From Paramicrosporidium saccamoebae KSL3 (Eukaryota > Fungi > Cryptomycota), in NCBI GenBank assembly GCA_002794465.1, contig MTSL01000167.1:6073-38072 (forward strand): a stretch of 32,000 nt of DNA, in the 5' to 3' direction. Positions 5,165-26,599 of this stretch are shown here, piece by piece. The position numbers were made by a program, and so were the translations under genes. Under the pieces are notes generated by a model that saw nothing but the letters and a program-made list of their open reading frames with translations, had not been told where the DNA came from and made no database searches. Position 1 is the stretch's first letter, and each line of letters begins with the position of its first letter.

Positions 5165-7507
5165 TCACTTGGCTGAGGTGAGACCAGGATGTAGTAAGAC
5201 TCCTTGTGGCGCCAGCACTAACACAGTACGACATGGAATGTACACTTGCAAATGATGGCTACGATGACACCATTCCCCCTGACGGGTATGGAACACCGAG
5301 ACACTCTCCATAACCCGTCCATGGCCTCCAAAGTATTCAGCATCACTGTTCAACACAATCCGGTACTCCCCAGGGCAATTCACTCCGACAGTGTAATCAA
5401 CAAAGCTCTTGTCGGGATGCAGATTGATCACAAATAACAATGTACCCCGTTCAAAGACAACTACCTTGTCCGTCTCGTGTTTAAGACTCACATAGGCTGC
5501 CGGTGTGGCTAGCAGATGATGTTGAATGTCCAACTGCATTAGACAGCGATCAAAGCGTTCGAGATGACGATATCGCAGCAACGGATCATCCGCCAGATGG
5601 TACTGTCGACGTGCGTAATGGTAGCTAAAGTTGTTTCCATGGCGAGGAAAGTCTAGCCATTCCGGATGGCCAAACTCATTGCCCATAAAGGTCAGATACG
5701 CCTCGCCGCCCAATGCAAACGACAACAAACGGATCAACTTGTGCAAGGCAATTCCGCGGTCAATGGTGGGAGTTAGGACCGTCATATCAGACATGTGTGT
5801 GTACATTTCCTGATCCATCAGCCAAAAGGCCAACGTCTTGTCGCCTACCAAGGCCTGATCGTGACTCTCGGCGTAGGAGATGGTCCGTTCCTTCCAACGA
5901 CGGTTTGTAAGGGTGTGTACTATCCGGCCCAAATCCCAATCTTCATCGCGTGTCTCCTTTAGCAGCTTAATCCACATGTCAGGGATTGCCATTCCCAGCC
6001 GATAATCAAAGCCCACGCCACCCTCCTCCACAGGACGACACAGCAACGGCATCCCCGACACATCCTCTGCTACTGTCACCATCTTTCCTGGATACAACAA
6101 ATGCAGCATGTAATTGGCCTACACATCAATACAAATCCTCTCCTACCAATTGCAGATAAACCAATGCCTCTCCATCCACTGTCGCTCCAAAGTATTCGTG
6201 GTAATCGCCACTGAATCCATATGCAATGCCGTGATGACGATATAACATGGAGGTGACGCCATCAAAGCGGAAGCCGTCGAAACGATACTCTTCGATCCAA
6301 AAACGCAAATTGCTCAGTAGGAAGCGCAACACTTCGCGATTTCCATAATTGAACAGTCGACTGTCCCACAAATCATGACGGCCCCTCCCGCCCTCGTGGA
6401 AATAGCAATGGTCCGTCCCATCAAACTCATTCAGTCCGTCCAATGTGTTCTTGCAGGCGTGAGAATGAACAATGTCCAGTAGCACAGAGATGCCCAACCC
6501 ATGCGCCGTGTCCACGAGATGCTTCAGATCCTCTGGGGTTCCATAGCGACTGGAGGCGGAGAAGAAGCTGGTTACTTGGTATCCAAAGCTACCATAATAG
6601 GCATGCTCCATAATGGCCATCAGTTGGATGCTGTTGTAACCCAGTGCATGGACTCTGGGCAGAATGGTGTCGGCATATTCGCGATAAGTGGCGACTTTGG
6701 CCTCGTTGGTACAAATGCCCACATGCGATTCATAGATGCGGAGGGTGTTAGGGGCAGTCAGACGATCGTGTTTCCAGACAAATGGGTTGGGGGGATCCCA
6801 GAACACCCCCTCATACAAATCCTGCGATCTCTTTTGTTCCGCTCGTGTAATCCACGCTGGAATCCGATCGATCCGACGTCCGTTGCTGTCGACCATGGAA
6901 ATCTTGACTCGACTTCCATGCGCAATGGGCAAGGAGCCGTCCGTTCGGCGTGGTAGCACAATCTCCCATACTCCCCATTCATCGCGTTTCATGGGATGGC
7001 TGCGTCCATTCCATTCATCTAAGAATAAGCCAGGCTGCATGAATTCTACTGAAATCTCCAAAGAAATAGGCTTCGGTGGCACCGGGCGCCCATTCCCGAT
7101 ACACAATGCCCTCAGTAGTCACATTAATGCCCAATCGATTGTATCCACGAGAGAATGCATCCAAACTGCCTTCACTCTCTACGATACTGTTCAGCGTATC
7201 CAAGAAATACTCATATCAACATCATTTACAACACTGACCCCGTGTACCTTGCCTCAATGGCGGGTCGGAAATGCGTCAGATAATGGTCCAATGCCACCGA
7301 CTTGTCCACGGCCAACTTTGCCGTCAGCAAACCTGCTCGTGGGTCTGATACAGGTGAGTCTAAAACTGACGTCTTCCCCTCACCTGTATCTCTCATCTTC
7401 CCCTCGACTGTATCTCTCACTCCCCCCTCAGCCGCATCTCTCGTTTTCCCTGCTCCCGTATCAGCGCTTGGCCTGATACAGTCCTCCCATTCCACCTCAA
7501 TCGTCAT
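5165..7507 (-). CDS. GLC3: 1,4-alpha-glucan (glycogen) branching enzyme, GH13_8; introns about 7217-7247 (ambiguous), 7019-7049, 6119-6146
   Basis: D.YL..F...I..RY; [10 protein letters not shown]; YREWAPGA...GDFNEW; LRIYESHVG; [23 protein letters not shown]; [14 protein letters not shown] (nucleophile); AEDVSGMP (acid/base); [14 protein letters not shown]; [16 protein letters not shown]. Confidence 0.98.
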
Positions 7508-7581
7508 GCCCTATGCCCCGTCAATGGGACATATTTAATCTAATGATTCCCGATTAGGAAAGTGGCAAATCTTACAAAACA
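7508..7581. promoter_or_regulatory. 74-bp putative bidirectional promoter shared by GLC3 and GDB1
   Basis: The spacer lies between the GLC3 ATG (7507, minus) and the reconstructed GDB1 ATG (7582, plus). It is AT-rich and contains a CCAAT-like cgattagg. Function is inferred from position only. Confidence 0.65.
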
Positions 7582-10500
7582 ATGACCGGATTGGGCAACG
7601 GGATGCCGTCGTGTCGTAGGACGACTGAGGGACTGGTTGTGCGACTGGATGGACGGGGCGAGCCGTGGCCAGCATACAAGGTAACATTGAGAGGGAGATG
7701 ATGATAAAGATAGTTTATACGGACATCTGAACGTCAATTGGCGTTTTTTATCGATGCGGACTATGTGTCGATGGAGGGGGAGGATGTGTTTCTGGAGATA
7801 GGGGAACGTCGGGAAAAGTAAACCAATGATATCGATTAACACGATTTAGATTTGTGGAGGAGAATGGACAGAGCCTTGTGGCACGGATATGTAGTCCTGA
7901 CGGAACTTTTTGCTATCGGGTGCGTAATGGAAGTCAATGCAGTAATGGCGGAACCATCCAAACCCTCATCCAACTCCGATTGAAAGACAAGACGATATCA
8001 GCAGATCAGATTGTGTTGCAGACGTTGGTTTCCAAATGGATGGGTCCAATAGCGGAATGGCAGCCGCATCTGAAAGCAGCTAGTGAAGCTGGCTTTAATA
8101 TGATCCATTTTACTCCATTGCAGAAACGGGGAATGTCCAACTCGCCCTATTCCATCTACAACCATTTGGAATTAGACCCCAGCCTATTCAGAGATGGCAC
8201 CCACCAGAACATGGAGGAGCTACAGAGGACAGTAGAATGGATGGAAAAGGAACTGGGAGTATTGGCACTGATTGATGTGGTGTGGAACCACACGGCCTGC
8301 GACAGTCCGTGGCTGGCAGACCATCCTGAAGCGGGCTATACTGTGCAGAATTCCCCCCATCTGGGCATTGCCTTTGAACTGGACGAAGCCATCCTTAAAT
8401 ACTCTAATGAAATCGAGTCGATGCATAATCTCTCTGCCGAGGTGGGATGTGAGGAGGATGTGCAAAAGATTTTGGAAGTGTTTGGAAACCACGTGTTGCC
8501 AGATCTGGCATTGTGGGAATATTTTGTAGTGGATGTTTCGAGAGCGGTGATGGAATTGGAAGCCGTCTTTCGACGAGAAGCTGTACACTCTCCCAAAGTG
8601 GAAATACCATCGACAGTGACTTTTCTAGAAGAGGCGACTTTGGACGATGGCTGCTTCCGTCGAAATTCTCATCGAATGGATGTGGATATGGTAAAGACAC
8701 ATTATCGACAAGAATTGGAGGAATACCGTCGGACGCCCAATGAACGCGATCGCAGTCTTTTGCTTTCCCGAGTGCTGAATGAATATCGGCTGCAACTCGA
8801 TCAGATTAACTATCCGCGCTATCAGCGATACGATGAAAAGGTGCAACAAATCCTAACAAATTTGACTAACCGATTGGTCTATGAACGGGTCGCAGAGAAT
8901 GGTCCACGGATGGGACCCATTGATGCACAAAATCCTCTCGTTTCCACTTACTTTACTCGCATCCCCCGACAGGATGGTGGAGTGTGGGCTTTTGCCAATA
9001 ACGGATGGATTTGGGATGCCGATCCATTACTTAATTTTGCCGAAGCAACCAGCGATGCTTATTTTACACGCGAAGTGATAGTGTGGGGCGACTGTGTAAA
9101 GTTGCGCTTTGGAAAAGGACCGGAGGACAGCCCGTGGCTGTGGGATTATATGCAGCGCTATACGGCTCAGATGGCGTCCCTATTCCATGGATTCCGTATC
9201 GACAATTGTCATTCCACGCCCCTCCACGTGGCAGAGGGACTTTTAAGGGTGGCGCGACAACATCGTCCCAATTTGTATGTCTGTGCTGAGTTGTTTACGG
9301 GATCAGAAGAACGCGATTTGCTGTATGTGACACGATTGGGTCTCAACTCGCTGATCCGGGAAGCCATGGTGGCTTGGGATACCAGCGAATTGGGCCGTAC
9401 CACTGCCAAATACGGTGGTCAGCCATCCGGTCCCTTTGATCGTCCCGAGTATCAAAACCCCCAATCAATGGGGATCCGTCCCTACCAATTAACAGGAATT
9501 TGTCCCTCTCAACCACATGCTCTGTACATGGACTGCACCCACGACAATGAAACCCCCACACAACGGAGAACCACTGAAGACGCCCTATCCAATGCCGCTG
9601 TGGTGGCCATGTGTAGTGCCGCCATCGGAAGCACACGTGGCTATGACGAACTTGTAGCAACGCATCTTAATATTGTCACAGAACAGCGCCATTATCAAAA
9701 GCCCGATCTGACCATGGGAATGTGGAGGGTTCGGGGTGAGCTAAACCGCATCCATCAGCAAATTGTGGAGGAGGGACTGACAGACATTTCGGTGCAGCAG
9801 GATCACGATTTGCTTCTCATCCGACGTACTAATCCAGCCACAACAAAATCACTACTATTGCTCGCCCGTACTGCCTTTGGTCCTACCAACTCTTCGTCCA
9901 TCTGTATCAATCCAATTGATTCCATGACTAATCAATTAGACGAACCGATTGTCTCTGAACGGTACAAAATGGCTGCGATTCTATCGGCACGGATAATGGT
10001 CATCGGACCGTCCACTGAGGGAAGTGACGTGTTTCCTGTAATCCCCACGCGTGTAGAAATGTCCACTGGTCGGATTGTGGAGGGAATGGCGGATTTGGAC
10101 CCGACCTGTCATCGATTGGAGCTCACAAACTTTTCTCCTGGTTCGGTTCTCATTCTCTCCTGCGAACCCGAGTTTGTTGTTCCCCGCCCGCTCCTGCAAC
10201 GCGACGACTGGAAGGCGGTGGAGGAGACAATTCAAAAGTTGGATCTGGTAGAGTTGAACATTTTGTTGTATCGTTGTGCGGAAGAGGAGAATGACAGTCC
10301 CAGTACATTGTAGTAGGGTTTGACTCTGTAGTGCAAATTGGAACATATACACTCCCCGGATATGGGGCATTGGTGTATTCAGGACTGCAGGGTTTCTATG
10401 CCGTAATCAAAAAGTTGCAGAATGCCCCCAACGACCATTGTCCGTTGTGTGACAATGTCCAGAGCGGCGATTGGGCTCTTGACTATTTGTGCAATAGACT

Positions 10501-12178
10501 TGATCGAAAGAATTATCCGCGATTGAGAGAATTGCAACAGGTTCTAAAACCAATCATGGAGGATATTAAGGGATTGGAGTCGAATATGAAGCCACGCCGT
10601 TTTGTGGAATTGGTATCCCAACTTTGCCAGACGGCCAAAGAACACGCTGTTGCTTTAATGAATCTCTCTAATCAAAGCGAATTGGTTCAGTCATTGGCTC
10701 TCACTTCGGTGCAGCTAATGACGGCAGTGGGATCTACGGGGCTGCATCCGACCGAATCGACTCGGCCCAGTTTGTCAGCGGGATTACCGCATTTTACCAC
10801 CCATCATATGCGTTGTTGGGGTCGTGACATTTTCATCTCATTGCCGGGTCTGCTTCTTCGGACGGGTCGCTTTGAGGAAGCCAAGCACCATCTGCTGGCC
10901 TTTGCAGCTTGTTATTACCGCGGTCTAATCCCCAACCTGTTGGATAGTGGACGAAGACCCCGTTATAATGCCCGAGATGCCACCTGGTTCTTCTTACACT
11001 CCCTCCAACGTTATTGTCGATTACGGTCTAAGAACCAAGGCACCGAGGGTGTTCGGGATGTCCAGGAGTTGCTAAACACTATGGTGCCCATGCGATTCCC
11101 CAACGATATTTACGTCGACTATGACGATCCCACCATCTTTACCCGCACCCGTAGACTTGCAGACATTGTACAGGACATTCTACAAGCGCATGCCCGTGGC
11201 ATCCAATTTCGAGAGTGGAATGCCGGTCCAGCCCTTGATCCGGTAATGACGGATGGCGGCTTTGCCATTAATGTGCGCTTGGATCCACAAACCGGAATGA
11301 TCCATGGTGGCAACCAACACAATTGTGGCACGTGGATGGACAAGATGGGTGAATCAAGCTCAGCAGGAAACCGAGGAGTGCCTACCACCCCACGCGACGG
11401 TGCCAGTATTGAGATTACTGCCTTGTTGGCTTCATGTTTGGACTGGCTGATTGCTGACAATCCCACAGGCAAAAAGTGTGTGACATTGGACAGTGACGCC
11501 GGAAATAAGACGGGAAAGGGTGGAGTGAAAAAGGAAACTGCTAGCGGAACGAGCGAGTTGACATTTGTCGAGTGGAGACTCCGATTGCAAGAAAACTTTG
11601 AAAAGTGCTTTTATATTCCCATGGAAAAGGACGACGACAATGGATACAAGATGGATCCCGTCCGAGTGGGTCGGCGTGGCATTTACAAAGACACATTCGG
11701 CGCCTCTTCTCCATCAGCCGATTACCAATTCCGTCCCAATATGGTCGTTGCCATGGCCATTGCACCGACATTATTTGTCCAAAAACACGCCCAATACGCC
11801 CTAAAACTGGTGGAGGAGGTGCTGGTGGGTCCATTAGGCATGCGCACCCTTGATCCGCTTGATCCATCCTATCGACCGGACTATAACAACGGAGACGACT
11901 CGCAGGATCCTCACATTGCTCGAGGCGCCAACTACCATCAAGGTCCCGAGTGGCTTTGGCTACTTGGATTCCATCTTAATGCCCTCTTCCATTTCCGTCA
12001 AATCACCTCTCTTGAAATGCTACATCGGTTGCAAGCACATTGGAAGTGTCTGCAGGGCGATTGGGAGGGATTGCCTGAACTCACCAACCGCGACGGTGCA
12101 TTTTGTCGGGATTCTTGTGTCTCCCAGGCATGGTCATCTGCCACCATTCTCGATGCGTTGCTCTCTCTCAAGGAATAG
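7582..12178 (+). CDS. GDB1: Glycogen debranching enzyme (4-alpha-glucanotransferase/amylo-1,6-glucosidase); introns 7681-7713, 7818-7849, probable stopless 9904-9939, 10303-10331
   Basis: LVVRLDGRGEP N-terminus; QTLVSKWMG; FNMIHFTPLQKRGMSNSPYSI; DVVWNHTA; FRIDNCHSTP; DCTHDNETP; AGLPHF...RCWGRDIFISLPG; WMDKMG; YHQGPEW; LPELT; QAWS. The ORFs at 7854 and 10331 join in frame through the 29-nt intron. Confidence 0.97.
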
Positions 12179-12266: not shown

Positions 12267-12834
12267 TTATACAAGTGTGGCTATTGCAATGCAGCCAGCT
12301 ATGATGGCGCTTGTGACAAGTGTCCAATCCACATTTACAATCCCTCCATCCCCGCCCCCATCCTTATTCCCATCCACCAGCTTTGCCATGGTGCGTCGGG
12401 CCATCGACTCGCCATCAATGGCACTGCGGATGGCAAAATACACTCGCAGCAAATCCTCCACCGGTTCTCCTTCTGTAATCAGCCGTTGCAATTGTTCCTC
12501 CTCCGTGCTGAAATCGAGGTGGGACGCGTCAAAGCGGTTGTGACACACCAGGAGACTACAGCTTAGACTATCTGGAAAAGTACTGTTGGAGCAGTATGGT
12601 CTTGCTGAATGGCAAAAGTCGGTAGTACGCCATGTATTCGAGCAGTGTTCCCTTCCGGGCCAATGCATGCAGAATCTCTATCATTTGCTTCTCCGACGAG
12701 TTGTGGGGGGTTTCCCGCGTATGTGTCGGAGTGGCAGTTTTAGCTTTCCGTGTATACTCTTCTCGGACATAAACATCTAGGGGATAGGTATCTGTTATGC
12801 ATTCATCCAGTGTATGTATTTCCCGAGTATGCAT
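12267..12834 (-). CDS. Hypothetical protein with a C-terminal transmembrane anchor; intron 12556-12583; start uncertain (ATG 12834 or 12684)
   Basis: Two track ORFs (12568-12864 and 12267-12668) join through a 28-nt gtacttttcc...ctaagctgtag intron. The product is ...MIEILHALARKGTLLEYMAYYRLLPFSKTILLQ|HLLVCHNRF...WTLVTSAIIAGCIAIATLV*. No family recognised. Confidence 0.55.
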
Positions 12835-12877
12835 ACTCTCACTAAGCGTGCATTCGCCCAACATAATCCAATTTCCC

Positions 12878-13789: not shown

Positions 13790-14161
13790 CCTTTCCGGGG
13801 TTGCGACAAGTTACGCCATATATGTATACGGATCATGAGGGATGCGCAAATAAATTCCCGCTTATGAGGTTAGGAACAGGACCCTCTATTAATGATTGAA
13901 CTTGCTTTAATGCCAGTAATACGCTATATCCTAGATCTGTTCTTCTGCCAGCGATATGTCGTGTTGCGAGTTTGATTGCCTGTCAGTAACAATGCACACA
14001 TCCAGCTTTACACCAATCATGCGCCTCGAGTTTTACACTAGCCATGTACGTTAGATCTTACACTAAGAATACATTGACAATCCCTTGGACGTTAGCAGCT
14101 CTTCAAGATTGCAGCATAATGATCGTCCATAACATGTCTCTCAGTGCACGTAGCCCCGGAA

Positions 14162-14507
14162 ATGTTCTCATCTCGTGTTCTAATGAGACACCGCGCAAGT
14201 GACGGCTGGCGGTCGTACTTTTTCAGCACCCACTTTTGGGGTCCCGGTAGCATTGGCTATCAATTAATGCATAGTGGTGAACTGGATGCTGCCGCTAGCC
14301 GCCATGGCTGACATGCGCAAGGACGCCTCCATAATCTCTGGGAAAATGACCCTCGCCCTATCCATGTATTCTCTGGTGTTTATGCGCTTCGCATGGATGG
14401 TGCAACCGCGGAATTATCTACTATTGGCGTGCCATGCGACGAACGAGGTGTGTCAGCTGTACCAAGGATATCGGTTCGTGACCCACCATCAGCTCACTCC
14501 CATCTAA
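14162..14507 (+). CDS. MPC1: Mitochondrial pyruvate carrier subunit 1; intron 14247-14274; start 14162 or 14183
   Basis: [11 protein letters not shown]|[13 protein letters not shown]...[40 protein letters not shown], the MPC1-type signature. Confidence 0.93.
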
Positions 14508-14619
14508 TCTGTAAATAAATGGCCATGACAATGTGATTGTATCATTCAGACACATTGATCATTTTGCAGGCAAATAGCCATTATCACATCGGCAGTTGTA
14601 AATTTATTATTTAACTTTG

Positions 14620-15690: not shown

Positions 15691-15699
15691 TGATTGGCT
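15691..15699. promoter_or_regulatory. CCAAT box (TGATTGGCT) upstream of the CRAL-TRIO gene
   Basis: Exact 9-mer 48 nt upstream of ATG 15739. Confidence 0.4.
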
Positions 15700-17190: not shown

Positions 17191-17289
17191 ATTTACTATT
17201 GTAAAGTGTGAAATGGTTATCTGAGGATTATATTGGTATTACGGCTATATTCCCACCGTAGAACGTTATCTCACAATTACCACCTCGGT

Positions 17290-19530
17290 CTAATATGAAC
17301 ATGCAATTACACATTTGGACACTAGCAATGGATCTCCGACAGTTTGTCTTTTGGGAAGGATAATTGCTGGGAACAAGTTTGACGGATGAATTAGTGTCGA
17401 CATTGTTCCATGCTGCACATGCAACACGTACCAAATCTGATCCGCGTCAATCTCTGCCAAGCATTTGATCATTCGAACTACATCCGTAGGGTTGATCCCA
17501 GAACCCGGAGCTAACAACATGTTGGCCGCCTCCCTAATGGTGAGAGGCGATATCCGTCCCAGTGACCGCAGTAGATCGACCACGACGAACACGCTGCTGA
17601 CGCGTCCTGTGGTGGCAGATTCTCTGGAAAATACAGCACCAATGTTGGGCAGCAATTCCTTCTGTACACGATCTGCCATAAAGCTGCCCGCAATCGCCGC
17701 TTGGCTACCGATAATCTGGAGGGCATATCTTGCAACTATTAGAGAAGGATCAGTAAGACGTGCCACCAAAGGTCGCCATGTGGAATGGACTACAGGCAAA
17801 AAGACAGACGACCGTTCCTTGGTAAACACTCGACAAGCCCCGTGTAGCACCTCCAGAGCTTCAAGTCGGATCCTTTCCTCATCAGAGGTGACAAAATGAA
17901 TGGCCACCTTGAGGGCAGCGTCTGTAAGCTCCTCCTCAATAGTCATTGGAAGATTCAATGGTTCCTCCTCCTCAATCTTGGGATCCTTTGGAACCGGCGT
18001 TTCACTATTTCTGAATACAGAAAGAGTCGTCTTCAACGCACTTAACAGCGACAGGGAATATCCACTATATCTTTGGTATTGCCACGCCCGATCCTCTAAT
18101 TCTCGAACAATGTCGAGTAGGACGGTGGCGTGGAGGGAATAGTCCACCGACCTGATCAGCTCTGCCAGTACCAGCGGAGTGTGAGGGAACAAGGTTGGGT
18201 ATCGGAGATCTGCCGAAATATTATTTAACAACACTTCTCCTCGATCTTGGAGCAGTTCATGAAAAGAATCAAACCCAAACAGCACGGCTAGCTTGGTGCC
18301 AGTAACATTCGCTGCTTCCTGTACGGGCACGTTGAGCGCCGTCTTCAGTCTTAATAAGGGACGGATCAAGGATTCACAAGATTTGTCTCCCCAGAGTATG
18401 CAGTTTGCCGCACTACACCATGCCAAATGCCACAGGTTCTCTTCCTTAAGGACATTATCAGCATTCGTGTCCGCCACTTCTCTGTCAGAATACTCATCAA
18501 ACCATCCAATTAGTTTATCAACAGCATCAATCGATTCTTTGTTCGCCTTGCCAAAAACTAATAGTTCATGGGCCTCTGGCCGGCCTTCGAATTCGAAATT
18601 GATCATATTGACATCCCGAAATAGCTCTACTAATTTCATAGATGTCCTGTCAATGTCCGACTCCCAACCCCATTGATCTAGACTATTGAGATAGGTTGGC
18701 AGCTTTGCCTGTTGCGCAAGATGCATAATCACGGGCTTACAGGTCGCAACAGTGGCAGTGGGCCATAAATGTGGGGGAACAAATTCACACAGGCCATGAA
18801 TCTCTTCCAAATGGCGAACCGTAATGACCTTTGGATTTGCCTCAGCAACAAATTCCATTGTAGTATCTAAAACCGTTACGGCCAGCGGCAACGTCTTTGG
18901 TTTCCACGACTTTGCTACCATCTTGGGCTGGCCCATCAGGGCAAGCCCTCTAATTACAGGTAATAATACTGTTTCATCCTTCAAATGTTCAGCTAGCAAA
19001 AGCATCTCTATCAACATTTCAGTATACTTTACAGCGAGTGGTGTGCTCCGAATCGAATAGCAAAGGCCAGCTAGCCTAGTTAACAATATCGAGAGCTTCC
19101 CATCTCTCTCTGCCCTCCTATGTGCTCTTCTTAGCATGCTACTCATGCAGTCAACGGCCATTTTGACAACCTCAATGGGCTCCTTCTCCCAACTACAAAG
19201 GAATTTTAACAGGGCCGTGCAAGTGCCTGGCATCACGAATTCCGGAAATTCGTCGTTTGGATGACGTCCTAGTAAGGAGCGGACACTTGCGGCAGCAATC
19301 TTGCGATACTCCAAAGCAAAGCTGCCATCGATCGTTTTCAGCAGCACATTCAAAACGTACCCGAGAGGTTGGTACATGTCAACATTTCCAAGCAGTTCAA
19401 GTGGCATGTTTTCTATGAGCATCTGCAGCTCCTTTAGTCGTGCCGTCTTTATGTTCATCGATACGGGCTCAGGAAGCTTGTCATCCAGCGAAGCCGCCAA
19501 GAGGCTCAATATTCGTCCAGCCGAGAGCAT
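17290..19530 (-). CDS. TTI1: HEAT-repeat protein, probable TELO2-interacting protein 1 (Tti1)
   Basis: 746-aa helical ORF with FEFVMPG...ALLKFL-like N-terminal segment, D.RYP.LFP..P.VL, A..V.IHF...D...IRL..L, and LPVVHSTWRPLVARLTD, the Tti1-like LP.VH..W..L..RL motif. Confidence 0.75.
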   Translation of the reverse strand: MLSAGRILSLLAASLDDKLPEPVSMNIKTARLKELQMLIENMPLELLGNVDMYQPLGYVLNVLLKTIDGSFALEYRKIAAASVRSLLGRHPNDEFPEFVMPGTCTALLKFLCSWEKEPIEVVKMAVDCMSSMLRRAHRRAERDGKLSILLTRLAGLCYSIRSTPLAVKYTEMLIEMLLLAEHLKDETVLLPVIRGLALMGQPKMVAKSWKPKTLPLAVTVLDTTMEFVAEANPKVITVRHLEEIHGLCEFVPPHLWPTATVATCKPVIMHLAQQAKLPTYLNSLDQWGWESDIDRTSMKLVELFRDVNMINFEFEGRPEAHELLVFGKANKESIDAVDKLIGWFDEYSDREVADTNADNVLKEENLWHLAWCSAANCILWGDKSCESLIRPLLRLKTALNVPVQEAANVTGTKLAVLFGFDSFHELLQDRGEVLLNNISADLRYPTLFPHTPLVLAELIRSVDYSLHATVLLDIVRELEDRAWQYQRYSGYSLSLLSALKTTLSVFRNSETPVPKDPKIEEEEPLNLPMTIEEELTDAALKVAIHFVTSDEERIRLEALEVLHGACRVFTKERSSVFLPVVHSTWRPLVARLTDPSLIVARYALQIIGSQAAIAGSFMADRVQKELLPNIGAVFSRESATTGRVSSVFVVVDLLRSLGRISPLTIREAANMLLAPGSGINPTDVVRMIKCLAEIDADQIWYVLHVQHGTMSTLIHPSNLFPAIILPKRQTVGDPLLVSKCVIACSY

Positions 19531-19572
19531 TTCGTTAATAAAATTATTTAATCTTTAACGTGTCGATTAGTG

Positions 19573-19581
19573 TGATTGGCT
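19573..19581. promoter_or_regulatory. CCAAT box (TGATTGGCT) in the 104-bp divergent spacer between TTI1 and the orphan gene
   Basis: Exact 9-mer between ATG 19530 (minus) and ATG 19635 (plus). Confidence 0.45.
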
Positions 19582-19634
19582 GTTTATTATGAAAATCAAT
19601 AAATAGGTGAGCTTTGGTCTTTTTGCCAACAAAA

Positions 19635-20159
19635 ATGCACGCGTGTCTCCTCGTTTTGGTAGTGCTCATTATTGCGGTAAATGGAGAATTGTTCATGCGC
19701 TCACTTTTGCTGTTCGAAGCGGAGGAACTCCCTGATCCAATGCAACTCCTCCCCCGTCAAGACTCTTTGGAGCTCCTCGGTCCTGGGGCTTCTTTGGCAA
19801 GCTTGGCAATTGTTCCTCAGAGCACCAACCTCACCATCTCCTGCACAGACGCATTTCTAGCAATTGTTCGAAACGATTACCCATCGCAGATCTGCACGCC
19901 GGGCGGAGAGATCCATCTTCGAAATGTAACCGTTACAGGCATCATGGAGGGGGATGTTCTCGTGGCGTCACTTATTGAAGATCTTGCCATCTCTGCAAGA
20001 CTCCTCTATGATCTTGCAAAACTACCCGATGAGATGCGTGCGTCCAGAGGCATTACACCGAGAAAGAAGCGTCTCTTGGATGCCACAGCCACAGGAAAGA
20101 TTTTACGCACGATAGTGGTACGGGTCGAAAGCGACACGAGCATGTATCAAGAACAGTAA
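19635..20159 (+). CDS. Hypothetical secreted protein (174 aa)
   Basis: MHACLLVLVVLIIAVNG resembles a signal peptide. Sequons NLT and NVT and an RKKR motif are present. The ORF fills an otherwise empty gap. No family recognised. Confidence 0.65.
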   Translation: MHACLLVLVVLIIAVNGELFMRSLLLFEAEELPDPMQLLPRQDSLELLGPGASLASLAIVPQSTNLTISCTDAFLAIVRNDYPSQICTPGGEIHLRNVTVTGIMEGDVLVASLIEDLAISARLLYDLAKLPDEMRASRGITPRKKRLLDATATGKILRTIVVRVESDTSMYQEQ

Positions 20160-20193
20160 CTGTGTAGTGGATGTAAGTAACCACTAAACTTAA

Positions 20194-20381
20194 TGACTGC
20201 GAATAATAATGGTGGTGACTGTAAATAATACTAATGATGATGACTGTAAATAATACTAATGATAATGACAACTACACATATTGGATAATACCTGGATACT
20301 ACGATCCATAACAACGGCACATCTTCGTTGCTTATAGTGGCTCATATCATAACGGTACATCTTTATTGCTTATAGTGGCTC
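20194..20381. repeat. 25-nt tandem repeat (20216-20265, plus a degenerate copy) and a 31-nt duplication with period 38 (20313-20343, 20351-20381) between convergent 3' ends
   Basis: tgactgtaaataatactaatgatga appears twice; aacgg(c/t)acatctt(cg/ta)ttgcttatagtggctc appears twice and abuts the RPS10 stop codon. Confidence 0.9.
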
Positions 20382-20768
20382 TTATGCGGTGGCCTCCTGC
20401 TTCCCACGCCATCCACCACGACGGTAGCCCTCCTCTCCGCGAGGACGACGCTCACCCTCCTCTTCACGGGGACGGCGTGCCGCCGCCTTGGCAATAGTGG
20501 CGGGTACGACGCTCTCCGGCATGTGCAAGTATCCACGGAGATACATGATACCCTCGTCGTTAAGGTAGTAGTAGTGGTGCTGCCACGAGAACTCCTCAGT
20601 GACAAAGCCGCGCGACTTGAGGGACTTTAGGACACTCATGGCATGGAGGTTGGCAACGGGAATATCGGCGTGCTTGGGGAGACGGACGTCCTTCTTGACC
20701 ACCATGACACCCTCGGTGAGGAGGTAAGTGTAGATGGTCTTAATGTCGCTCTTCGGTACGATCATCAT
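20382..20768 (-). CDS. RPS10: 40S ribosomal protein S10 (eS10)
   Basis: MMIVPK...IY.YL..EGVMVVKKD...PKH..I.VANLHAM....SLKSRGFVTEEFSWQHHYYYLNDEGI.YLR.YLHMP..VVPAT, and EGYRR. Confidence 0.97.
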   Translation of the reverse strand: MMIVPKSDIKTIYTYLLTEGVMVVKKDVRLPKHADIPVANLHAMSVLKSLKSRGFVTEEFSWQHHYYYLNDEGIMYLRGYLHMPESVVPATIAKAAARRPREEEGERRPRGEEGYRRGGWRGKQEATA

Positions 20769-21095
20769 TTTGCTGGACTGTTGGAAGGATGGATGGTTTA
20801 TCCACCGATGGTTCAAGTCCTAGACTTAGAGGCCGAGCAGGGGTAGGGATGACTGGGATGTCGAGGCGCCGGTGCGACGTTGTAGTGGTTTGTAATAATA
20901 CAGTGACGAAGTAGCTATCTAGTGGCTATCTAGTAGTTATATAATGATATAGTGATGCCGCACTGGTGCAATGATGGTGCAGTATTGGTATGATGCTGAT
21001 CCAATAATAATGTAATGCTGGCCCAATTGCCAATAGGGTAATGATCACAAATCGCAACCCACGGGTCAAATAACCATACATCATACACCAATGGT

Positions 21096-21453
21096 CTATT
21101 GTCTGTCCTCTAAACGGGAACATATTTTAGAAATTCTTTGCAGGAGATCATCAACCGTCAATCGCGCGGTGCTATAGGTTACGGTCTGGTTGTCCCCTAG
21201 AATTGAGTGCATAATGTGATATACTGAAAGTAACAGCCGCACTGGGCTCTGAACCGTAAGCACTAATAGTTGTAGAAATATGCACACTGGGATTATTGTC
21301 GGAGAACTTTGTGGTCTGGATTCGATTCAGAAGCATACTACAGTGTCACAAGTTGAGTGGAAAGATGTACCGGGCGGAGGAGCTGTCGGCAGAGACAGAC
21401 GGAAAGGCAAGCTTGATAGCCTTGATATTCCGCAAAACCAATTCGCGGCGCAT
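21096..21453 (-). CDS. Probable mitochondrial ribosomal protein mL53 (yeast Mrpl44 family, thioredoxin-like fold), 98 aa; introns 21338-21370, 21197-21224
   Basis: Three exons (83+113+101 nt) give MRRELVLRNIKAIKLAFPSVSADSSSARMLLNRIQTTKFSDNNPSVHISTTISAYGSEPSAAVTFRDNQTVTYSTARLTVDDLLQRISKICSRLEDRQ*. The pattern AR..L..I......NP.V.I......P...V.F.D....L...D+...I fits mL53 or the related L51/S25/CI-B8 fold. Confidence 0.7.
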
Positions 21454-21584
21454 CGGTTACGAGTAAATCAGTTTATTTGTCCAGTCAGAAGACCCCATTC
21501 TCGGAATCTGCCCTGCTATCGCTATCGTTATCGTTATTTACTAACTCTGACATGTAAAACTAAACTCTAAGGGCCTCTTTCCTA

Positions 21585-23212
21585 TCATAAAAGGCCCTTG
21601 AACACGACAATCTCGTCGTCGCTGACGTCAACAGGCGGACTTGTATGCTCTCCTGGATCTTGATGTTCTTTTCCTGGGCTTGCATGTTCTTTTCCTGAGC
21701 TTGCATGTTCTCCTACTGGACTTGCATGTCCTTCTACTGGGTTTGCATGCTCTCCTACTGGACTTGCATGCTCCCCTACTGGACTTGAATGCTTCTCTAC
21801 TGGACTTGCGTGCTCCGCTAAATGTTGCTGTTCCTCTGCTGAAATTACGCGTTCTACTGGATTTTGATGCTCCTCCACTGGACTTGCATGATCTATTAGG
21901 AGACTTGACTCGGCGAATTGACTAAATCCAAGTTCAGGGACCATGTTATCACGAGCGAGTAATTCAGAGAGAAATTCTGATCCTTCGGATGGCAAGGACT
22001 CTAGTATCGGCTCAAAAATGTCAAATCCCTGTAGTTGCTCCATCATTTCCATAGATTTGCTGCTTAGTATTAATTTTCTATGCTCCCCAAGCCACCGAAC
22101 AACTTGTTCGCACTGTGACGTATCTGTCAGCCTCCAAACAGCAACCATGGCTGCGATACAAAAGAGACGATCGTCGTTGGTCCCTTGATGAACGGATGCT
22201 TTCGAATCTGTTTGTACAAAGACGTTCAGAAACCTTCCCAGACACTGCCTGAAAGAGCCGCCAAAGTCACCAGTGATCCTGGCGGCGGCTCCCAAAATCA
22301 TCAAAATGGACGCAAACTCAAAAGAAGACATTTTCAGCACCCTCTTCCTCATCCATGTCTCAATCTCCAAAGTGTCAATTGTCAAAGTGTCTTTAGACAA
22401 GGCATCGTTGATAAACCGCATAAATGGCTTCCACACAGAGACCTCATTTACAGCCTCAGTATCTTTCAGAATCACCTTTTCCAAATAGGCCTTCAGGTTG
22501 GTCCTCGAAGCTGTAAACGGAAGCGCACAGCATTCGGCCCGCAAGTACCAAAGAACTGTCATCAACACATCCTGCAGCATACTGCAAATAACGGCAATTT
22601 GATTACAGGCGTGGCCATGATCGGGATTCATCTCCCGTGCCGCCACATAGATGCGCCAGGAGAGCTGATACGAATCTTCCTGAAAGTATTTGTTAAATTG
22701 GCTGCGATATCGGGCCAAATCCCCACAAAAGATAAGCAGCCGATAAATGACCGCATTGAGGCCAGGTGTAAAAGTGTCTGTTGGTCTGGCGGGTGGTAGA
22801 CCGAGCAACTTGAAAATCTCATCGAGGATGGCCACGTTTCCAAGAGAGACTAGCTCATGGAGAAGCGTGGCAATAAAGGCAATGCCCGAATCGATAATTC
22901 GATTGAGCTCACAAAATGCCCAGCGTCCCTGCGGAGACTTTGAGTCACGGACACGACGGCGGTAGTAGTCTACTGGCTGGTGGAAACAGTGCCTCCAGAG
23001 CATCGAATCGACATTTTCTGTATGCGAGTCACCTGGATATTCCAGAATGCACTCCCGATATCGCAGCTGAAGACTACAAGTTCAGAACGCATCCACAAGT
23101 ACTCATATCGTTGCCGCGTCACTTTGACATCCTCCATCCCATCGGTCCTAATGACATCCTCTAGCCTATCCTCCAATTCTTTTATTTGAGCCAACTTTAG
23201 CCCAAATTCCAT
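21585..23212 (-). CDS. EST1/SMG5-7/Ebs1-family protein (14-3-3-like TPR domain, no PIN domain seen); intron 23074-23102
   Basis: RY|DLQLRYRECILEYP...VDSMLWRHCFHQPV; LLIFCGDLARYR; Y.AA..M.PD.G.ACNQIAVI; WYLRA....PFTASRTNL; C-terminal DEIVVFKG. Confidence 0.85.
21633..21893 (-). repeat. About 11 copies of a 21-nt coding repeat (EHASPVG-like heptad) in the EST1/SMG-like C-terminal tail
   Basis: Plus-strand units such as tgcatgttctcctactggact. Nine units lie at 21633-21815 and two at 21852-21893. Confidence 0.9.
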
Positions 23213-23229: not shown

Positions 23230-25302
23230 TCAGGAGTCTTTATTCTTAAGCAGCGAATCAAGTGGGACCAGTGCCCCCAATGCCCTTCGTTCCAATTTCG
23301 TCAGGTATTGCTGGCCGACCAGATAACTTGCATTCATCCAGGCAAACCCCTCGCGCGGCACTTTTTTAAATTCAGTCCCAACATTCCCATACTCGGCATC
23401 CACTTTGTGTGACATCTGGACAACATTGAACTTTTCAGGAACCACGCCATTAAAGTCCACAAAGGCGCAGGTGATCATGTACAGCCAGCGATAAACAAGT
23501 CGACGGGCATCGTCAGAGTATCCGTAGTTTACGAGACCCTCCCAAGCAAGTATCTGATGTGGCACCCATCCGGTTGGGTAGTCCCACTGTCTGTTAGGCC
23601 GGTCTAGAGATACAGCACCCAAAGACTCCTTAGTCCCACTAACAATTCCGCCCGACACTTCAAACCTGCAAAGGGCCTTGGTTACTAGCAAGTTGGCCTG
23701 GTGCGTAGACGCCATCTGCGACCATAGCGCCCAGAACATGGTTGCGGATTCATAGGTTGTCTGGCTTTGACTAACAATATTATAGTCAAAGTACATTCCC
23801 TTTTCCTCGTTCCACAAATACTTATCAGCCAATTCCCTCCTGCAATCAGCCTTTGCAGCCCAATCGCAGCTTAGATGTTCCTTACCATCAACACGGAGAC
23901 ATCCTCCGCAAGACTGCTCAATGTAATTGGCAATGTCACGTTCATACTTGTACAGCAAGGAACATAGATCTATTGTCAGCAGGTTTGCGGCACAATTATC
24001 CAGGCGATAGGTTGTATCGTGGCCAGACTCTCGTACTGACCGATCATGGCAAAAATATTCGTCCAACTCGGGTTCGTCGATAGTTTGCTCATTGTACATT
24101 TTGATAAATGTGGAAATGTCACATCCATACTTCTCGGCAAAAGGCTTCAGGTGGCTATCAAAATGTGATGCTTCGGTTTCGGGGGGCACGCCTTGCCCTT
24201 TACTGTAATATCTGCTCAAGCCAATCTCCTCTACCAATCTTGGCGCCGACATCCAAACTTGTTCGTATTCTTTGATAGCGGCCGCCATTACTCCCCTCAG
24301 CCACTCATCAGCGTTGGCTGGCTCTTCTTTTTCGCCTTCCGCACATTTTGTACTCTTTAACTTTTGGTAGACCCTGAGACCCATATCTGTAAGAAATGGT
24401 GGCTGTGATCTAAGCAGGTAGTAGCTTCGATTGGCATTTAAAATTTTGCCATAATGGTTAATCTGATAAACAAAATTATCCACCATTGATTTTGCAATAT
24501 GCACAGCATTTGCGCTGGGGTCAACGAGTAAACCAAGTGCAGCAAAGTAAGAGTCCCATCCATACATTTCATTAAATCGTCCCCCAGGAACAATAAATGG
24601 TTTTCCGACAATATCAGAGTGGTCATTTCGCTCAAGGTCAAGGGATAGGATGCCGGGCCTATCGTTGATGCTGCATACGTATTCGGGGGTGATGAGGGCA
24701 GGCAATCTGATCACTTCCAAATCCAGATAAACTCTTGTTTTTGAAACCTGCTCAAAGTAGTCAAAAGCAAAGTCATCTCCGTTCGGCACGTAGACTCTCG
24801 GCCGTTTATTTGCGCTGCGATTCTTAGGATCCATGCAAATAACCGTCAGCCCGTCAGCATCCACCCTCCTAACCAGCGCCGGCCAAAAGTACTGGCTAAT
24901 CATACGATTTAGTCTGTCCACTGGATTTTCTTTTAGTTGACTTTCCGAAATGACCGCATGTGACCTCAACACCAGCGGCTCTGGACCTTCCGTTGGTAGA
25001 CCCTCCAACAGCGCCAGTTCCTGTAATAGCGATGAAATCATGTAATTTCCCTTGACACTACGACGAGCATAAGAGGACTGGGTAGTAGGTAGGGTCATAT
25101 GCTTGGGCCCAGTGTCGTGGATGGTGACGCGTTCATCGCCGTCAGTGTCCTCCTGACGCAGGAGACGAGCCTTGGTCCGATGCACATCTACAAGAAAGAT
25201 ATTGGGACGGGTATGGCCTTCGGAGATAGAGTTGCGGCGATGGGGAAGGGGACTAGAACTCCGACTGTCGTCGTCGTCCTCCAATATGTACCGCAATGAC
25301 AT
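23230..25302 (-). CDS. NTH1: Neutral trehalase (GH37) with N-terminal regulatory region
   Basis: RRNS PKA-type site; DTDGDERVTIHD Ca-binding-like motif; PGGRFNEMYGWDSY; NANRSYYLLRSQPP; RESGHDTTYR; RQWDYPTGW.PHQ; PEKFNV; YGNVG; EGFAWMNASY. Confidence 0.97.
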   Translation of the reverse strand: MSLRYILEDDDDSRSSSPLPHRRNSISEGHTRPNIFLVDVHRTKARLLRQEDTDGDERVTIHDTGPKHMTLPTTQSSYARRSVKGNYMISSLLQELALLEGLPTEGPEPLVLRSHAVISESQLKENPVDRLNRMISQYFWPALVRRVDADGLTVICMDPKNRSANKRPRVYVPNGDDFAFDYFEQVSKTRVYLDLEVIRLPALITPEYVCSINDRPGILSLDLERNDHSDIVGKPFIVPGGRFNEMYGWDSYFAALGLLVDPSANAVHIAKSMVDNFVYQINHYGKILNANRSYYLLRSQPPFLTDMGLRVYQKLKSTKCAEGEKEEPANADEWLRGVMAAAIKEYEQVWMSAPRLVEEIGLSRYYSKGQGVPPETEASHFDSHLKPFAEKYGCDISTFIKMYNEQTIDEPELDEYFCHDRSVRESGHDTTYRLDNCAANLLTIDLCSLLYKYERDIANYIEQSCGGCLRVDGKEHLSCDWAAKADCRRELADKYLWNEEKGMYFDYNIVSQSQTTYESATMFWALWSQMASTHQANLLVTKALCRFEVSGGIVSGTKESLGAVSLDRPNRQWDYPTGWVPHQILAWEGLVNYGYSDDARRLVYRWLYMITCAFVDFNGVVPEKFNVVQMSHKVDAEYGNVGTEFKKVPREGFAWMNASYLVGQQYLTKLERRALGALVPLDSLLKNKDS

Positions 25303-25415
25303 GTGTTAATAGCGGGATACAAATAATTACTTTATCCATGTGGGAAAATAATTTAGTATAAGCAAGTGTAACGGCTTGTTAGCCAGAATCCTGTGGGAAC
25401 AGATGTTGCCAGCCA

Positions 25416-26599
25416 TTAACGGGTGAAACCCGTGGCAGGCTTCGGGATCGGCAATCTACGTTCTGGGTCATAATTACGCTCATCCTCGCTGTCGTCGTTG
25501 ATGATAGTCTTTCGACTTGGTGTTCTACTAATCTTTTTTTGGAAAAACGACTCGACATCGTCTGTCCACTTGATTCGGTAGTTTGCAAAGTCGCTGGCTG
25601 TCTGTCCGTCAGTTTCAGTGCTATGTTGGGGTTCGTGGCTGTTGTTTTGCCAGCTGAACGGATTGTATCCCTACATGGTCAGATAAGACCTGCGCACAGT
25701 ACAGATCCATTGTAGAGACTCATAAAGGATGGGGGATTGGCAGATTGGCCCTACACATGAGGTACGCTTACAATGCCTTGCCTTTGGCTTGATAAATTCG
25801 TCGTGTAAATTCCACCACATTTGGACATACTCCAAATGCACCTTGGTTCCGTCTCCACGTGCAGCAACCTGGCCATCAGAGAACCTGCTGAAATGCCATG
25901 GCTTTGTGGATCCAATAAAATGCACCGCCCGCACTTCATTCTTGTTACGTTCAAAGGCCGGCAGGTAGCTGTAGCAGGCATTAAAAGTCAAATTGTATGT
26001 AAAGGGGATCCGACGGGATGACGATCCGGTGGCCCAGTCCGAAAAGTAGCTGTTAAGTAAGCCTTGGTCCCCACCTACAAAAATAAGGATATTGCACTGA
26101 TTTTACCATCAAAACTTCCCTGTGTCTGAGCGAGCTTCCATAGGCCATTGAAGGTATCCAAATTGGGCTTGCATACAAATAGACCGGAATTGAAGCAGTC
26201 CGGCCATCCCACATCCGCGCACGCCGAAAACTCTTCCCTTTCAAACAAATCATCGATATTCTTCAAAACCATCATGTCGGCATCCAGAAACACCGCCTTC
26301 TTCAAGTCTGTCAATGTCCACAACTGAATCTTTGTGAACGTCTGTCCGAGCTCCGGCCGACCCAGCAGACGCAAACTATGCTCGTCCCCAGAGTCTAACG
26401 GAGCAACAAACCGCACGTCGTAGAGCTCCCGAAGGCTGGCTACACAGTCGGCAGCTAGATGAGAGGTTGCCAGACAAACTAACGGACGAGTGGTGCCAGA
26501 GCGGCGGAGAGATTGTGCGAGGACGAGGGCACCGACGACGTACGCATCACTGGTCACCAGCGTGACATATGCCTCACCTTCGGTTGTGGTGTTTGTCAT
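25416..26599 (-). CDS. GLG1: Glycogenin (GT8); introns 26075-26106, candidate GC-AG 25751-25781, 25671-25702; last two exons less certain
   Basis: EAYVTL...D.Y..GALVL..SLR; RPELG.TFTKI.LWTLT..KKAVFLDAD; ..DVGWPDCFNSGLFV..P; SFDG|GDQGLLN.YF; IPFTYN; YSYLPAF (autoglucosylation Tyr context); HFIG..KPW. Confidence 0.95.

What the first reader, a model, noticed from the sequence alone, without database searches (positions are those of the whole stretch)
5165..26599. Candidate storage-carbohydrate gene cluster: GLC3 + GDB1 and NTH1 + glycogenin within 21.5 kb
Seen: 4 of the 22 genes act on glycogen or trehalose. They form two directly adjacent pairs separated by ten apparently unrelated genes. Established: glycogenin primes glycogen, the branching enzyme builds it, the debranching enzyme removes branches, and neutral trehalase mobilises trehalose. 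In S. cerevisiae these genes are on different chromosomes, and trehalose breakdown has been proposed to drive spore germination in microsporidia. Inference: physical linkage may reflect selection for co-regulation of reserve build-up and mobilisation across the spore cycle, a primary-metabolism cluster I do not recognise as described. Glycogen synthase, phosphorylase and TPS are not in this window.
Basis: partly seen in the sequence, partly recalled or inferred. Interest (0 to 1): 0.72.

Follow-up and report, generated by a model that had tools for sequence, protein, structure and literature searches.

The report
Glycogen and trehalose genes linked in Paramicrosporidium
Four real glycogen and trehalose genes lie close together in the amoeba parasite Paramicrosporidium saccamoebae, but only the back-to-back branching/debranching enzyme pair, which shares a tiny conserved promoter region, looks like more than leftover gene order.

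Summary
The window is Paramicrosporidium saccamoebae contig MTSL01000167.1. All four genes are real:
- GLC3, 5165-7507 (-)
- GDB1, 7582-12178 (+)
- NTH1, 23230-25302 (-)
- glycogenin, 25416-26599/27008 (-)

They form two adjacent pairs separated by 8 unrelated genes, not 10.

Under random gene order (3750 genes, 8-20 pathway genes), P(4 within 12 genes) is 5e-6 to 4e-4. The category was chosen after seeing the data, so this is suggestive only.

Uncultured relatives (GDB1 44-58% identical, NTH1 60-62%) keep both pairs. They keep the unrelated neighbours just as well (GDB1-BMT5, REI1-glycogenin). Breakpoints fall between the pairs. One relative (L091) has no NTH1 or glycogenin next to the rearranged block.

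Outgroups do not show the pairs. Sorochytrium and 80 metagenomic GDB1 loci have no GLC3 nearby, and Amoeboaphelidium NTH1 has no glycogenin nearby.

The new result is that GLC3 and GDB1 sit head to head, 74 bp from ATG to ATG. This follows from an unannotated, conserved GDB1 exon 1. The spacer holds a ~50-bp element with core TTCC-N5-AGGAA, conserved in four lineages (z up to 16), with a core-only variant in two deeper ones. Two control divergent spacers are not conserved.

Verdict: one probable bidirectional-promoter pair. A selected four-gene cluster is not supported.

The parts
5165..7507 (-). GLC3, the 1,4-alpha-glucan branching enzyme (GH13 family; 724-aa annotated product with several short introns)
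   Evidence: Pfam CBM_48, Alpha-amylase and Alpha-amylase_C. PDB 5clt (human GBE1) E=9e-120. Gene model. The start 'MTIE...' matches the L003 start 'MTVE...'.
7508..7581 (.). 74-bp ATG-to-ATG spacer between GLC3 and GDB1. A conserved ~50-bp element covers roughly 7533-7581. Its core is TTCCCGATTAGGAAA at 7547-7561, preceded by TAAT/CAAT-like boxes.
   Evidence: Spacers are 74, 103, 131 and 148 bp in the window, L091, L003 and L004. Local-alignment z-scores are 16.1 (window-L091), 16.5 (L091-L003), 8.8 (L091-L004) and 10.1 (window-L003). The control divergent spacers ADK<>SNW and REI1<>CLP1 give z=2.1 and 0.8, and 3' spacers give z<=0 in 3 of 4 comparisons (the fourth, GDB1-BMT5 window-L004, z=3.5). 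A core variant, TTCCATATAAGGCAA, occurs in L010 and L093. The core is the only match in the 32-kb window.
7582..7680 (+). GDB1 exon 1 (33 aa, MTGLGNGMPSCRRTTEGLVVRLDGRGEPWPAYK), missing from the NCBI model. The intron that follows is 7681-7859.
   Evidence: The equivalent exon ends ...PLPAYK|GT in L004...PLAPFQ|GT in L003...PLAVCR|GT in L091 and ...LAEYQK|GT in L010 and ...LADYQK|GT in L093. Reading frame checked.
7860..12178 (+). GDB1 exons 2 and 3, the bifunctional glycogen debranching enzyme. They are separated by a 29-nt intron at 10303-10331.
   Evidence: Pfam hDGE_amylase, hGDE_central and GDE_C. Relatives read straight through '...EENDGSRQIGTYDLPGYG', which shows that the annotated 188-nt intron is wrong.
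12267..23212 (.). Eight intervening genes unrelated to storage carbohydrate: BMT5-like rRNA methyltransferase (-), MPC (+, about 14334-14495), mitochondrial carrier (+), Sec14/CRAL-TRIO (+), TTI1 (-), unknown (+), RPS10 (-), EST1 (-)
   Evidence: Pfam scans, annotated models, and tblastn with the L004 MPC protein.
23230..25302 (-). NTH1, a neutral trehalase (GH37). It is 690 aa with no intron. The N-terminus has RRNS (residues 22-25), RRS (80-82) and a Ca2+-binding motif (D52-D63).
   Evidence: Pfam Trehalase E=4e-145 and Trehalase_Ca-bi E=2e-9. Translation. Homologues are 52-58% identical to named fungal neutral trehalases in the list.
25416..27008 (-). Glycogenin (GT8), directly upstream of NTH1 on the same strand. 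The span given is the annotated one. The likely ATG is at 26599 and there are at least two introns.
   Evidence: PDB human glycogenin-1 E=3e-50, with 'LDADMMV' aligned to 'MDADTLV'. The exon with 'YSYLPAFERN...VHFIGSTKPW' is seen. The annotated product is 360 aa.

Best explanation
The window comes from the compact 7.3-Mb genome of Paramicrosporidium saccamoebae. It carries four intact storage-carbohydrate genes arranged as two independent neighbour pairs.

GLC3 and GDB1 (pair 1). The two genes are transcribed away from each other across a 74-bp spacer. The spacer carries a conserved ~50-bp element made of TAAAT/CAAT-like boxes and an inverted TTCC-N5-GGAA core. I infer that this is a shared, bidirectional core promoter. 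It would co-express the two enzymes that set and repair glycogen branch structure. Because any break inside it would damage a promoter, it would also lock the pair together.

Glycogenin and NTH1 (pair 2). These two genes lie in tandem. The sequence upstream of NTH1 is not consistently conserved, and the two genes act in opposite physiological directions. NTH1 keeps the fungal-type PKA-consensus sites and the Ca2+-binding module. I infer from these that it is controlled mainly after translation, so a shared transcriptional unit is not needed.

The four-gene neighbourhood. The closeness of the two pairs, 8 genes apart, is best read as inherited gene order in a slowly rearranging block. It arose within the Paramicrosporidium-like clade and is already being broken up in some members.

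Shown here: gene identities, layout, conservation pattern, the spacer element and its absence from controls. Inferred: promoter function, co-expression and mode of regulation.
For: - Organism and gene models.
- Gene identities.
- GLC3<>GDB1 is kept head to head in L003, L004, L091, L010 and L093, where GDB1 is 44-58% identical to the window protein.
- GDB1 exon 1 is conserved, which gives ATG-to-ATG spacers of 74-148 bp.
- The spacer element is conserved at z=8.8-16.5. Control spacers are not conserved, with one marginal exception (GDB1-BMT5, window-L004, z=3.5).
- Glycogenin followed by NTH1 is kept in L005, L006/L007 and L094/L095.
- The unrelated neighbours BMT5 and REI1 are kept equally well (and the calls above).
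- Breakpoints between the pairs are seen in L003, L004, L091 and L094.
- Outgroups lack both adjacencies: Sorochytrium, Amoeboaphelidium, and 80 metagenomic GDB1 loci, 52 of them with at least 2.5 kb of upstream flank.
- In fungi, conserved divergent pairs tend to be functionally related, and a short intergenic distance predicts conservation of gene order (PMC2871058).
Against: - The random-order probability of all four genes lying within 12 genes is very small, 5e-6 to 4e-4. Pure coincidence for the four-gene proximity is therefore uncomfortable.
- REI1-glycogenin-NTH1 and GLC3-GDB1-BMT5 both stay near the MCF-SEC14 genes in several lineages. The neighbourhood may therefore be ancestral to the clade and partly retained.
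- Short divergent spacers of about 85-115 bp are normal in this genome (ADK<>SNW, TTI1<>unknown), so the 74-bp distance alone is not special.
- The conserved element lies only 20-55 bp from the GDB1 ATG. It could be the core promoter or 5' UTR of GDB1 alone.
- No expression data were available.
- Rozella and Mitosporidium could not be examined.
Confidence: 0.6

Rival explanations
1. All four genes form a storage-carbohydrate neighbourhood kept together by selection, so that reserve build-up and mobilisation are co-regulated across the spore cycle, for example through a shared chromatin domain.
For: The nominal permutation probabilities are small. Both pairs are conserved in relatives. In L094 the glycogenin-NTH1 pair sits directly beside MCF-SEC14, the same genes that flank GDB1-BMT5 elsewhere. 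That hints at an old shared neighbourhood.
Against: Eight housekeeping genes lie between the pairs. Unrelated neighbours are conserved equally well. Breakpoints concentrate between the pairs, and L091 has no NTH1 or glycogenin in the 10 kb beyond SEC14. No NTH1 relative lists a contig as long as the L091 contig. No common motif was found. The pairs are absent from outgroups. The category was chosen after seeing the data.
Confidence: 0.12
2. Nothing here is functional at the level of gene order. Both adjacencies arose by chance during genome compaction and persist only because this block rearranges slowly. The conserved spacer element is the private promoter of one gene.
For: GDB1-BMT5, REI1-glycogenin, RPS10-EST1 and unknown-RPS10 are as conserved as the related pairs. 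One adjacent pair within a 10-gene category is expected in about 2.4% of categories, which means several per genome. The element sits closer to the GDB1 ATG. Short spacers are the rule in this genome.
Against: The GLC3<>GDB1 spacer is the only one of three divergent spacers tested with strong conservation. The pair survives in the deepest relatives, L010 and L093, where a gene has been inserted between GDB1 and BMT5 and the carrier gene has been lost. Two related adjacent pairs in one category has P of 8e-5 to 4e-3.
Confidence: 0.25
3. The linkage is an assembly artefact, such as a chimeric contig.
For: None. The assembly is a draft of 221 scaffolds.
Against: Independent contigs from unrelated sequencing projects (Logan SRA runs, JGI and ENA metagenomes) reproduce each junction.
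Confidence: 0.01

Closest known systems
Conserved head-to-head (bidirectional-promoter) gene pairs in eukaryotes, such as H2A-H2B, HSP60-HSP10, GPAT-AIRC and yeast GAL1-GAL10
   Same: The genes are divergent, the spacer is far below 1 kb, the two products act in one pathway, and the adjacency is conserved across species with a conserved spacer element. This is the class described in PMC2871058.
   Different: The GLC3-GDB1 partnership itself does not appear in the literature I searched. It is restricted to the Paramicrosporidium-like clade. Shared promoter use and co-expression have not been shown.
Bacterial glg operons (glgB-glgX-glgC-glgA-glgP)
   Same: The branching and debranching enzyme genes are immediate neighbours and presumably co-regulated.
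   Different: The bacterial genes point the same way and are read as one transcript. Here the pair is divergent, and the enzymes are the eukaryotic types, including the bifunctional GDE. There is no synthase or phosphorylase in the neighbourhood, and nothing indicates horizontal transfer: the best hits are fungal.
Fungal primary-metabolism gene clusters (GAL7-GAL10-GAL1, the DAL cluster)
   Same: Genes of one physiological process are physically linked in a fungus-related genome.
   Different: Those clusters are contiguous or nearly so and are co-induced. Here two pairs are split by 8 unrelated genes. The members act in opposite directions (synthesis primer versus trehalose breakdown). The linkage between the pairs is broken in relatives.
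Loose, above-random pathway clustering and conserved microsynteny in eukaryotes
   Same: Pathway genes lie nearer to each other than random order predicts, and the block is inherited among relatives.
   Different: This is a statistical tendency, not a defined system. The present case fits it without needing a dedicated mechanism.

Membership tests
Eukaryotic metabolic gene cluster (GAL/DAL type) | Three or more genes of one pathway that are contiguous or have very few unrelated genes between them | tested here: not met
   Two pairs are separated by 8 unrelated genes spanning about 11 kb.
Eukaryotic metabolic gene cluster (GAL/DAL type) | The cluster is conserved beyond the background level of synteny | tested here: not met
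   The unrelated neighbours BMT5 and REI1 are conserved equally well. Breakpoints lie between the pairs. L091 lacks NTH1 and glycogenin near the block.
Eukaryotic metabolic gene cluster (GAL/DAL type) | The members are co-regulated | not testable with these tools
   No expression data were available. No shared upstream motif was found.
Bidirectional-promoter (head-to-head) gene pair | Divergent orientation with a spacer under 1 kb | tested here: met
   The GLC3 ATG is at 7507 (-) and the GDB1 ATG at 7582 (+), giving a 74-bp spacer.
Bidirectional-promoter (head-to-head) gene pair | The arrangement is conserved across species | tested here: met
   It is present in L003, L004, L091, L010 and L093. 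It is absent in Sorochytrium and in 80 metagenomic GDB1 loci.
Bidirectional-promoter (head-to-head) gene pair | Regulatory elements in the spacer serve both genes, and the genes are co-expressed | tested here: inconclusive
   A conserved ~50-bp element is present. Its use by both genes has not been shown and expression could not be tested.
Glycogenin (GT8) | DxD metal and UDP-glucose binding motif, and the self-glucosylated tyrosine in a YSYLPAF-type loop | tested here: met
   'LDADMMV' aligns to the human motif at E=3e-50. 'YSYLPAF' is present in the next exon. That this is the acceptor-tyrosine motif rests on my recall of the human sequence.
Fungal neutral trehalase (GH37, Nth1 type) | GH37 catalytic domain plus an N-terminal Ca2+-binding module and PKA-type phosphorylation sites | tested here: met
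   PF01204 and PF07492 both hit. RRNS and RRS motifs are in the translation. Phosphorylation itself was not tested.
Eukaryotic glycogen debranching enzyme (AGL/Gdb1) | A glucanotransferase domain, a central domain and a C-terminal glucosidase domain in one chain | tested here: met
   PF14701, PF14702 and PF06202 all hit. The N-terminal PF14699 domain is not detected in this clade.
Bacterial glg operon | Genes point the same way and are co-transcribed, with synthase and phosphorylase present | tested here: not met
   The pair is divergent, has introns, and no synthase or phosphorylase lies on the 38-kb contig.

The most novel reading that the evidence does not exclude
The common ancestor of the Paramicrosporidium-like Rozellomycota assembled a real storage-carbohydrate neighbourhood, with GLC3<>GDB1 and glycogenin>NTH1 both beside MCF-SEC14. 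Selection for co-expression during spore formation and germination favoured this arrangement. The conserved TTCC-N5-GGAA element would be the binding site of a regulator that also controls the other glycogen and trehalose genes in the genome.
Probability: 0.12. Interest if true: 0.5.

Novelty: new member of a known kind. Interest (0 to 1): 0.27.

Why it matters
If the GLC3<>GDB1 spacer is a true bidirectional promoter, it would be a compact, natural example of a eukaryote coupling glycogen branching to debranching through gene order. It would also supply a defined 50-bp cis-element for studying gene regulation in Rozellomycota, a group with no genetic tools. In addition, the work corrects the public GDB1 gene model.

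The broader claim, a storage-carbohydrate cluster tied to the spore cycle, would be of moderate interest to people working on the evolution of metabolic gene clusters and on microsporidian germination. The present evidence does not support it.

Tried and rejected
- **STRE motifs.** I looked for the yeast stress-response core (AGGGG/CCCCT), which controls glycogen and trehalose genes in yeast. There are 32 sites in 32 kb and none directly upstream of NTH1 or glycogenin. The local excess at 7372-7450 is a 24-bp coding repeat in the GLC3 N-terminus. Rejected as a common regulator.
- **The spacer core as a shared motif.** TTCYN5AGGAAR does not occur upstream of NTH1 or glycogenin in the window. 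A single hit upstream of glycogenin in L005 is not repeated in L006, L007 or the window.
- **A mis-registered pattern.** My first version of the pattern carried an extra W and missed the real site.
- **Contaminated controls.** In the first local-alignment control, several "intergenic" intervals contained unannotated exons (BMT5<>MCF, RPS10 upstream, REI1<>CLP1) and gave falsely high scores. I redid the controls with tighter limits.
- **Early reading of L004.** I first took it to show that NTH1 and glycogenin were absent. In fact the contig ends inside eIF2A, so it shows only a rearrangement.
- **Literature.** Searches for an earlier description of the pair or cluster found nothing relevant.
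- **RNA genes.** Rfam and the tRNA scan of the window found nothing.
- **Not reachable.** Rozella and Mitosporidium orthologues did not appear among the 120 hits listed per search. The other storage genes of P. saccamoebae (GSY, GPH1, TPS1/2, UGP1, PGM) could not be located with the tools available.
Full report
**Origin of the window.** The intact trehalase and histone H1 reading frames are found, residue for residue, on one record only. That record is NCBI GCA_002794465.1, contig MTSL01000167.1, 38,072 bp. The debranching enzyme is named there as a Paramicrosporidium saccamoebae protein. Window position equals record position minus 6072. The genome paper gives 7.3 Mb, 221 scaffolds and 3750 genes, and mentions neither glycogen nor trehalose.

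**Checking the observation.**
- GLC3 (5165-7507, minus strand) has the CBM48, GH13 catalytic and C-terminal domains. It matches human branching enzyme at E=9e-120.
- GDB1 (plus strand, ending at 12178) has the glucanotransferase, central and glucosidase domains.
- NTH1 (23230-25302, minus strand) has the GH37 domain and the neutral-trehalase Ca2+-binding module.
- The GT8 gene upstream of NTH1 matches human glycogenin-1 at E=3e-50, with the DxD motif aligned. It carries the YSYLPAF tyrosine loop in its next exon.

The two pairs are each directly adjacent. Between them lie eight unrelated genes, not ten: BMT5-like methyltransferase, MPC, a mitochondrial carrier, Sec14, TTI1, one unknown, RPS10 and EST1. 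The other 6 kb of the contig adds no carbohydrate gene.

**Chance.** I simulated 3750 genes in random order with 8-20 storage-carbohydrate genes.

| Event | Probability |
|---|---|
| At least one adjacent pair | 1.5-10% |
| At least two adjacent pairs | 8e-5 to 4e-3 |
| Four genes within 12 genes | 5e-6 to 4e-4 |

These values are small for a category named in advance. This category was picked after reading the window, during a scan of many windows, and many pathway-size categories could have been noticed. On an assumed figure of about 150 such categories per genome, the family-wise chance of two pairs is about 1% to well over 10%, depending on how many genes the category is taken to hold. That becomes unremarkable once many genomes are scanned. 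The numbers are suggestive but not decisive.

**Relatives.** Homology searches with GDB1, NTH1 and Sec14 found uncultured relatives in SRA and metagenome assemblies. Their GDB1 is 44-58% identical to the window protein and their NTH1 60-62%. I read their contigs and compared them with the window by tblastn.
- GLC3 and GDB1 are head to head in every lineage where the upstream flank is visible: L003, L004, L091, L010 and L093 (for L093).
- Glycogenin followed by NTH1 is kept in L005, L006/L007 and L094/L095.
- The unrelated neighbours are kept just as faithfully. BMT5 lies downstream of GDB1 in all five contigs. REI1 lies upstream of glycogenin in all three lineages. RPS10-EST1 and unknown-RPS10 are kept in three of three.
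- Rearrangements fall between the two pairs:
  - L003 breaks after the carrier gene.
  - L004 goes from Sec14 to succinyl-CoA ligase and an inverted eIF2A.
  - L091 has Sec14 followed by an inverted EST1-RPS10-unknown-TTI1 block and then two unrelated genes, with no NTH1 or glycogenin in the locus.
  - L094 has REI1-glycogenin-NTH1 placed directly beside the carrier and Sec14.
- L091 and L094 share no nucleotide similarity, so they are different organisms.

So each pair is stable, but no more stable than unrelated pairs, and the link between the pairs is not maintained.

**Outgroups.**
- In Sorochytrium, GDB1 has no GLC3 within 10 kb.
- In Amoeboaphelidium, NTH1 has no GT8 gene within 10 kb.
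- A scan of metagenome contigs returned 80 GDB1 loci, 63 of them distinct at 90% nucleotide identity. Fifty-two have at least 2.5 kb of upstream flank. None has GLC3, NTH1, glycogenin, BMT5 or SNW in its flanks.

In yeast and human the four genes are unlinked (established knowledge). The adjacencies therefore arose within the Paramicrosporidium-like clade.

**The GLC3-GDB1 spacer.**
- The NCBI GDB1 model starts at 7851 and is marked partial. Upstream, at 7582-7680, lies an open exon ending ...PAYK|GT. An equivalent exon with the same donor position is present in L003, L004, L091, L010 and L093. With an acceptor at 7859/7860 the reading frame is continuous.
- This places the GDB1 ATG only 74 bp from the GLC3 ATG. 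The spacers are 103, 131 and 148 bp in L091, L003 and L004.
- Within the spacer, a block of about 50 bp is conserved. It reads TAAAT-N-CAAT, then TTCC-N5-AGGAAGGTG, then ATCT-ACAAAACA.
- Local-alignment z-scores against shuffled sequence are 16.1 (window-L091), 16.5 (L091-L003), 10.1 (window-L003) and 8.8 (L091-L004).
- The deeper pair L010 and L093 keep only the core variant TTCCATATAAGGCAAG. That is not significant on its own (z=0.9).
- Controls: two other divergent spacers give z=2.1 and 0.8, and three of four comparisons of convergent 3' spacers give z<=0; the fourth gives z=3.5. NTH1 upstream regions give z near 0 in most comparisons (z=3.6 and 8.0 in two).
- The core occurs once in the 32-kb window, where 0.32 matches are expected by chance.
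- Short divergent spacers are normal in this genome: 113 bp between ADK and SNW, and about 85-105 bp between TTI1 and its neighbour. What stands out is the conservation, not the distance.

**Mechanism.** I propose that the spacer is a shared core promoter driving GLC3 and GDB1 together. The shared promoter also protects the pair from being split. This fits the general finding that conserved divergent pairs in fungi tend to be functionally related, and that short intergenic distance predicts gene-order conservation (PMC2871058). The element could still belong to GDB1 alone, since it lies 20-55 bp from that ATG.

For glycogenin and NTH1 I see no consistently conserved upstream sequence and no motif shared with the first pair. 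NTH1 keeps PKA-consensus sites (RRNS at 22-25, RRS at 80-82) and the Ca2+ module. From knowledge of yeast Nth1, this suggests control after translation.

The trehalose-germination idea is documented for aquatic microsporidia only (PMC10381864). Nothing here bears on it directly.

**Comparison with known systems and novelty.**
- The GLC3<>GDB1 pair belongs with the known class of conserved head-to-head pairs. It is functionally analogous to glgB-glgX adjacency in bacterial glg operons, though it differs in orientation, enzyme type and origin.
- The four genes together do not meet the definition of a metabolic gene cluster.
- I found no earlier report of this pair.
- I rate it a new member of a known kind, of modest interest. 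The cluster hypothesis as written is not supported but also not excluded, at about 12%.

**Limits.**
- No expression data were available.
- Rozella and Mitosporidium could not be examined.
- The other storage genes of this genome were not located.
- The relatives' contigs are short, so absence of linkage is firmly shown only for L091, within its locus.

Noticed in passing
window 7582-7680 and 10303-10331 (GDB1): The public GDB1 model (1379 aa, marked 'partial') lacks a conserved first exon. It also removes 188 nt as an intron, which deletes 56 conserved residues (MQIGTYTLPGYG...DYLCNR). The real intron is only 29 nt.
   Followed up: yes
window about 6119-6146 (GLC3) and 10303-10331 (GDB1): Both genes contain GT...AG introns of only 28-29 nt. 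Relatives read straight through at the GDB1 site. Very short introns may be a feature of this genome and could mislead gene callers.
   Followed up: partly
window about 14334-14495 (+): A mitochondrial pyruvate carrier (MPC) coding segment, 70% identical to the L004 MPC, lies inside the span of an annotated 192-aa 'Mito_carr' model. The annotation probably merges or misses a gene here.
   Followed up: partly
window 28703-31871 (+): The public annotation fuses CLP1 and eIF2A into one 898-aa product. In relative L006 the two are called as separate reading frames.
   Followed up: no
GDB1 proteins P0001-P0006, P0026 and P0043: The debranching enzymes of the Paramicrosporidium-like clade have no detectable hGDE_N domain (PF14699), which most fungal homologues in the list carry. 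Their N-terminal region is much shorter.
   Followed up: no
L003 12052-18111; L091 17562-21476: Lineage-specific genes with no recorded Pfam family lie at the rearrangement breakpoints next to the syntenic block: proline/serine-rich ones with hydrophobic N-termini in L003, and one with a hydrophobic N-terminus and one acidic repeat-rich one in L091.
   Followed up: no
L093 1-40: The ENA contig begins with what looks like an Illumina adapter remnant (...CTCTTTCCCTACACGACGCTCTTCCGATCT). The contig end is not clean biological sequence.
   Followed up: no
window 1416-2164, 3604-3683, 7372-7450, 21637-21820: There are in-frame coding tandem repeats. Histone H1 has SPKK-type repeats. SNW and the GLC3 N-terminus have 24-bp repeats. 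The EST1 C-terminus has 21/42-bp repeats (HASPVGE).
   Followed up: no
window 23230-25302, NTH1 residues 22-25, 52-63 and 80-82: The trehalase N-terminus keeps two RRxS-type PKA-consensus sites and the DTDGDERVTIHD Ca2+-binding motif. This suggests fungal-type post-translational activation in this parasite.
   Followed up: partly
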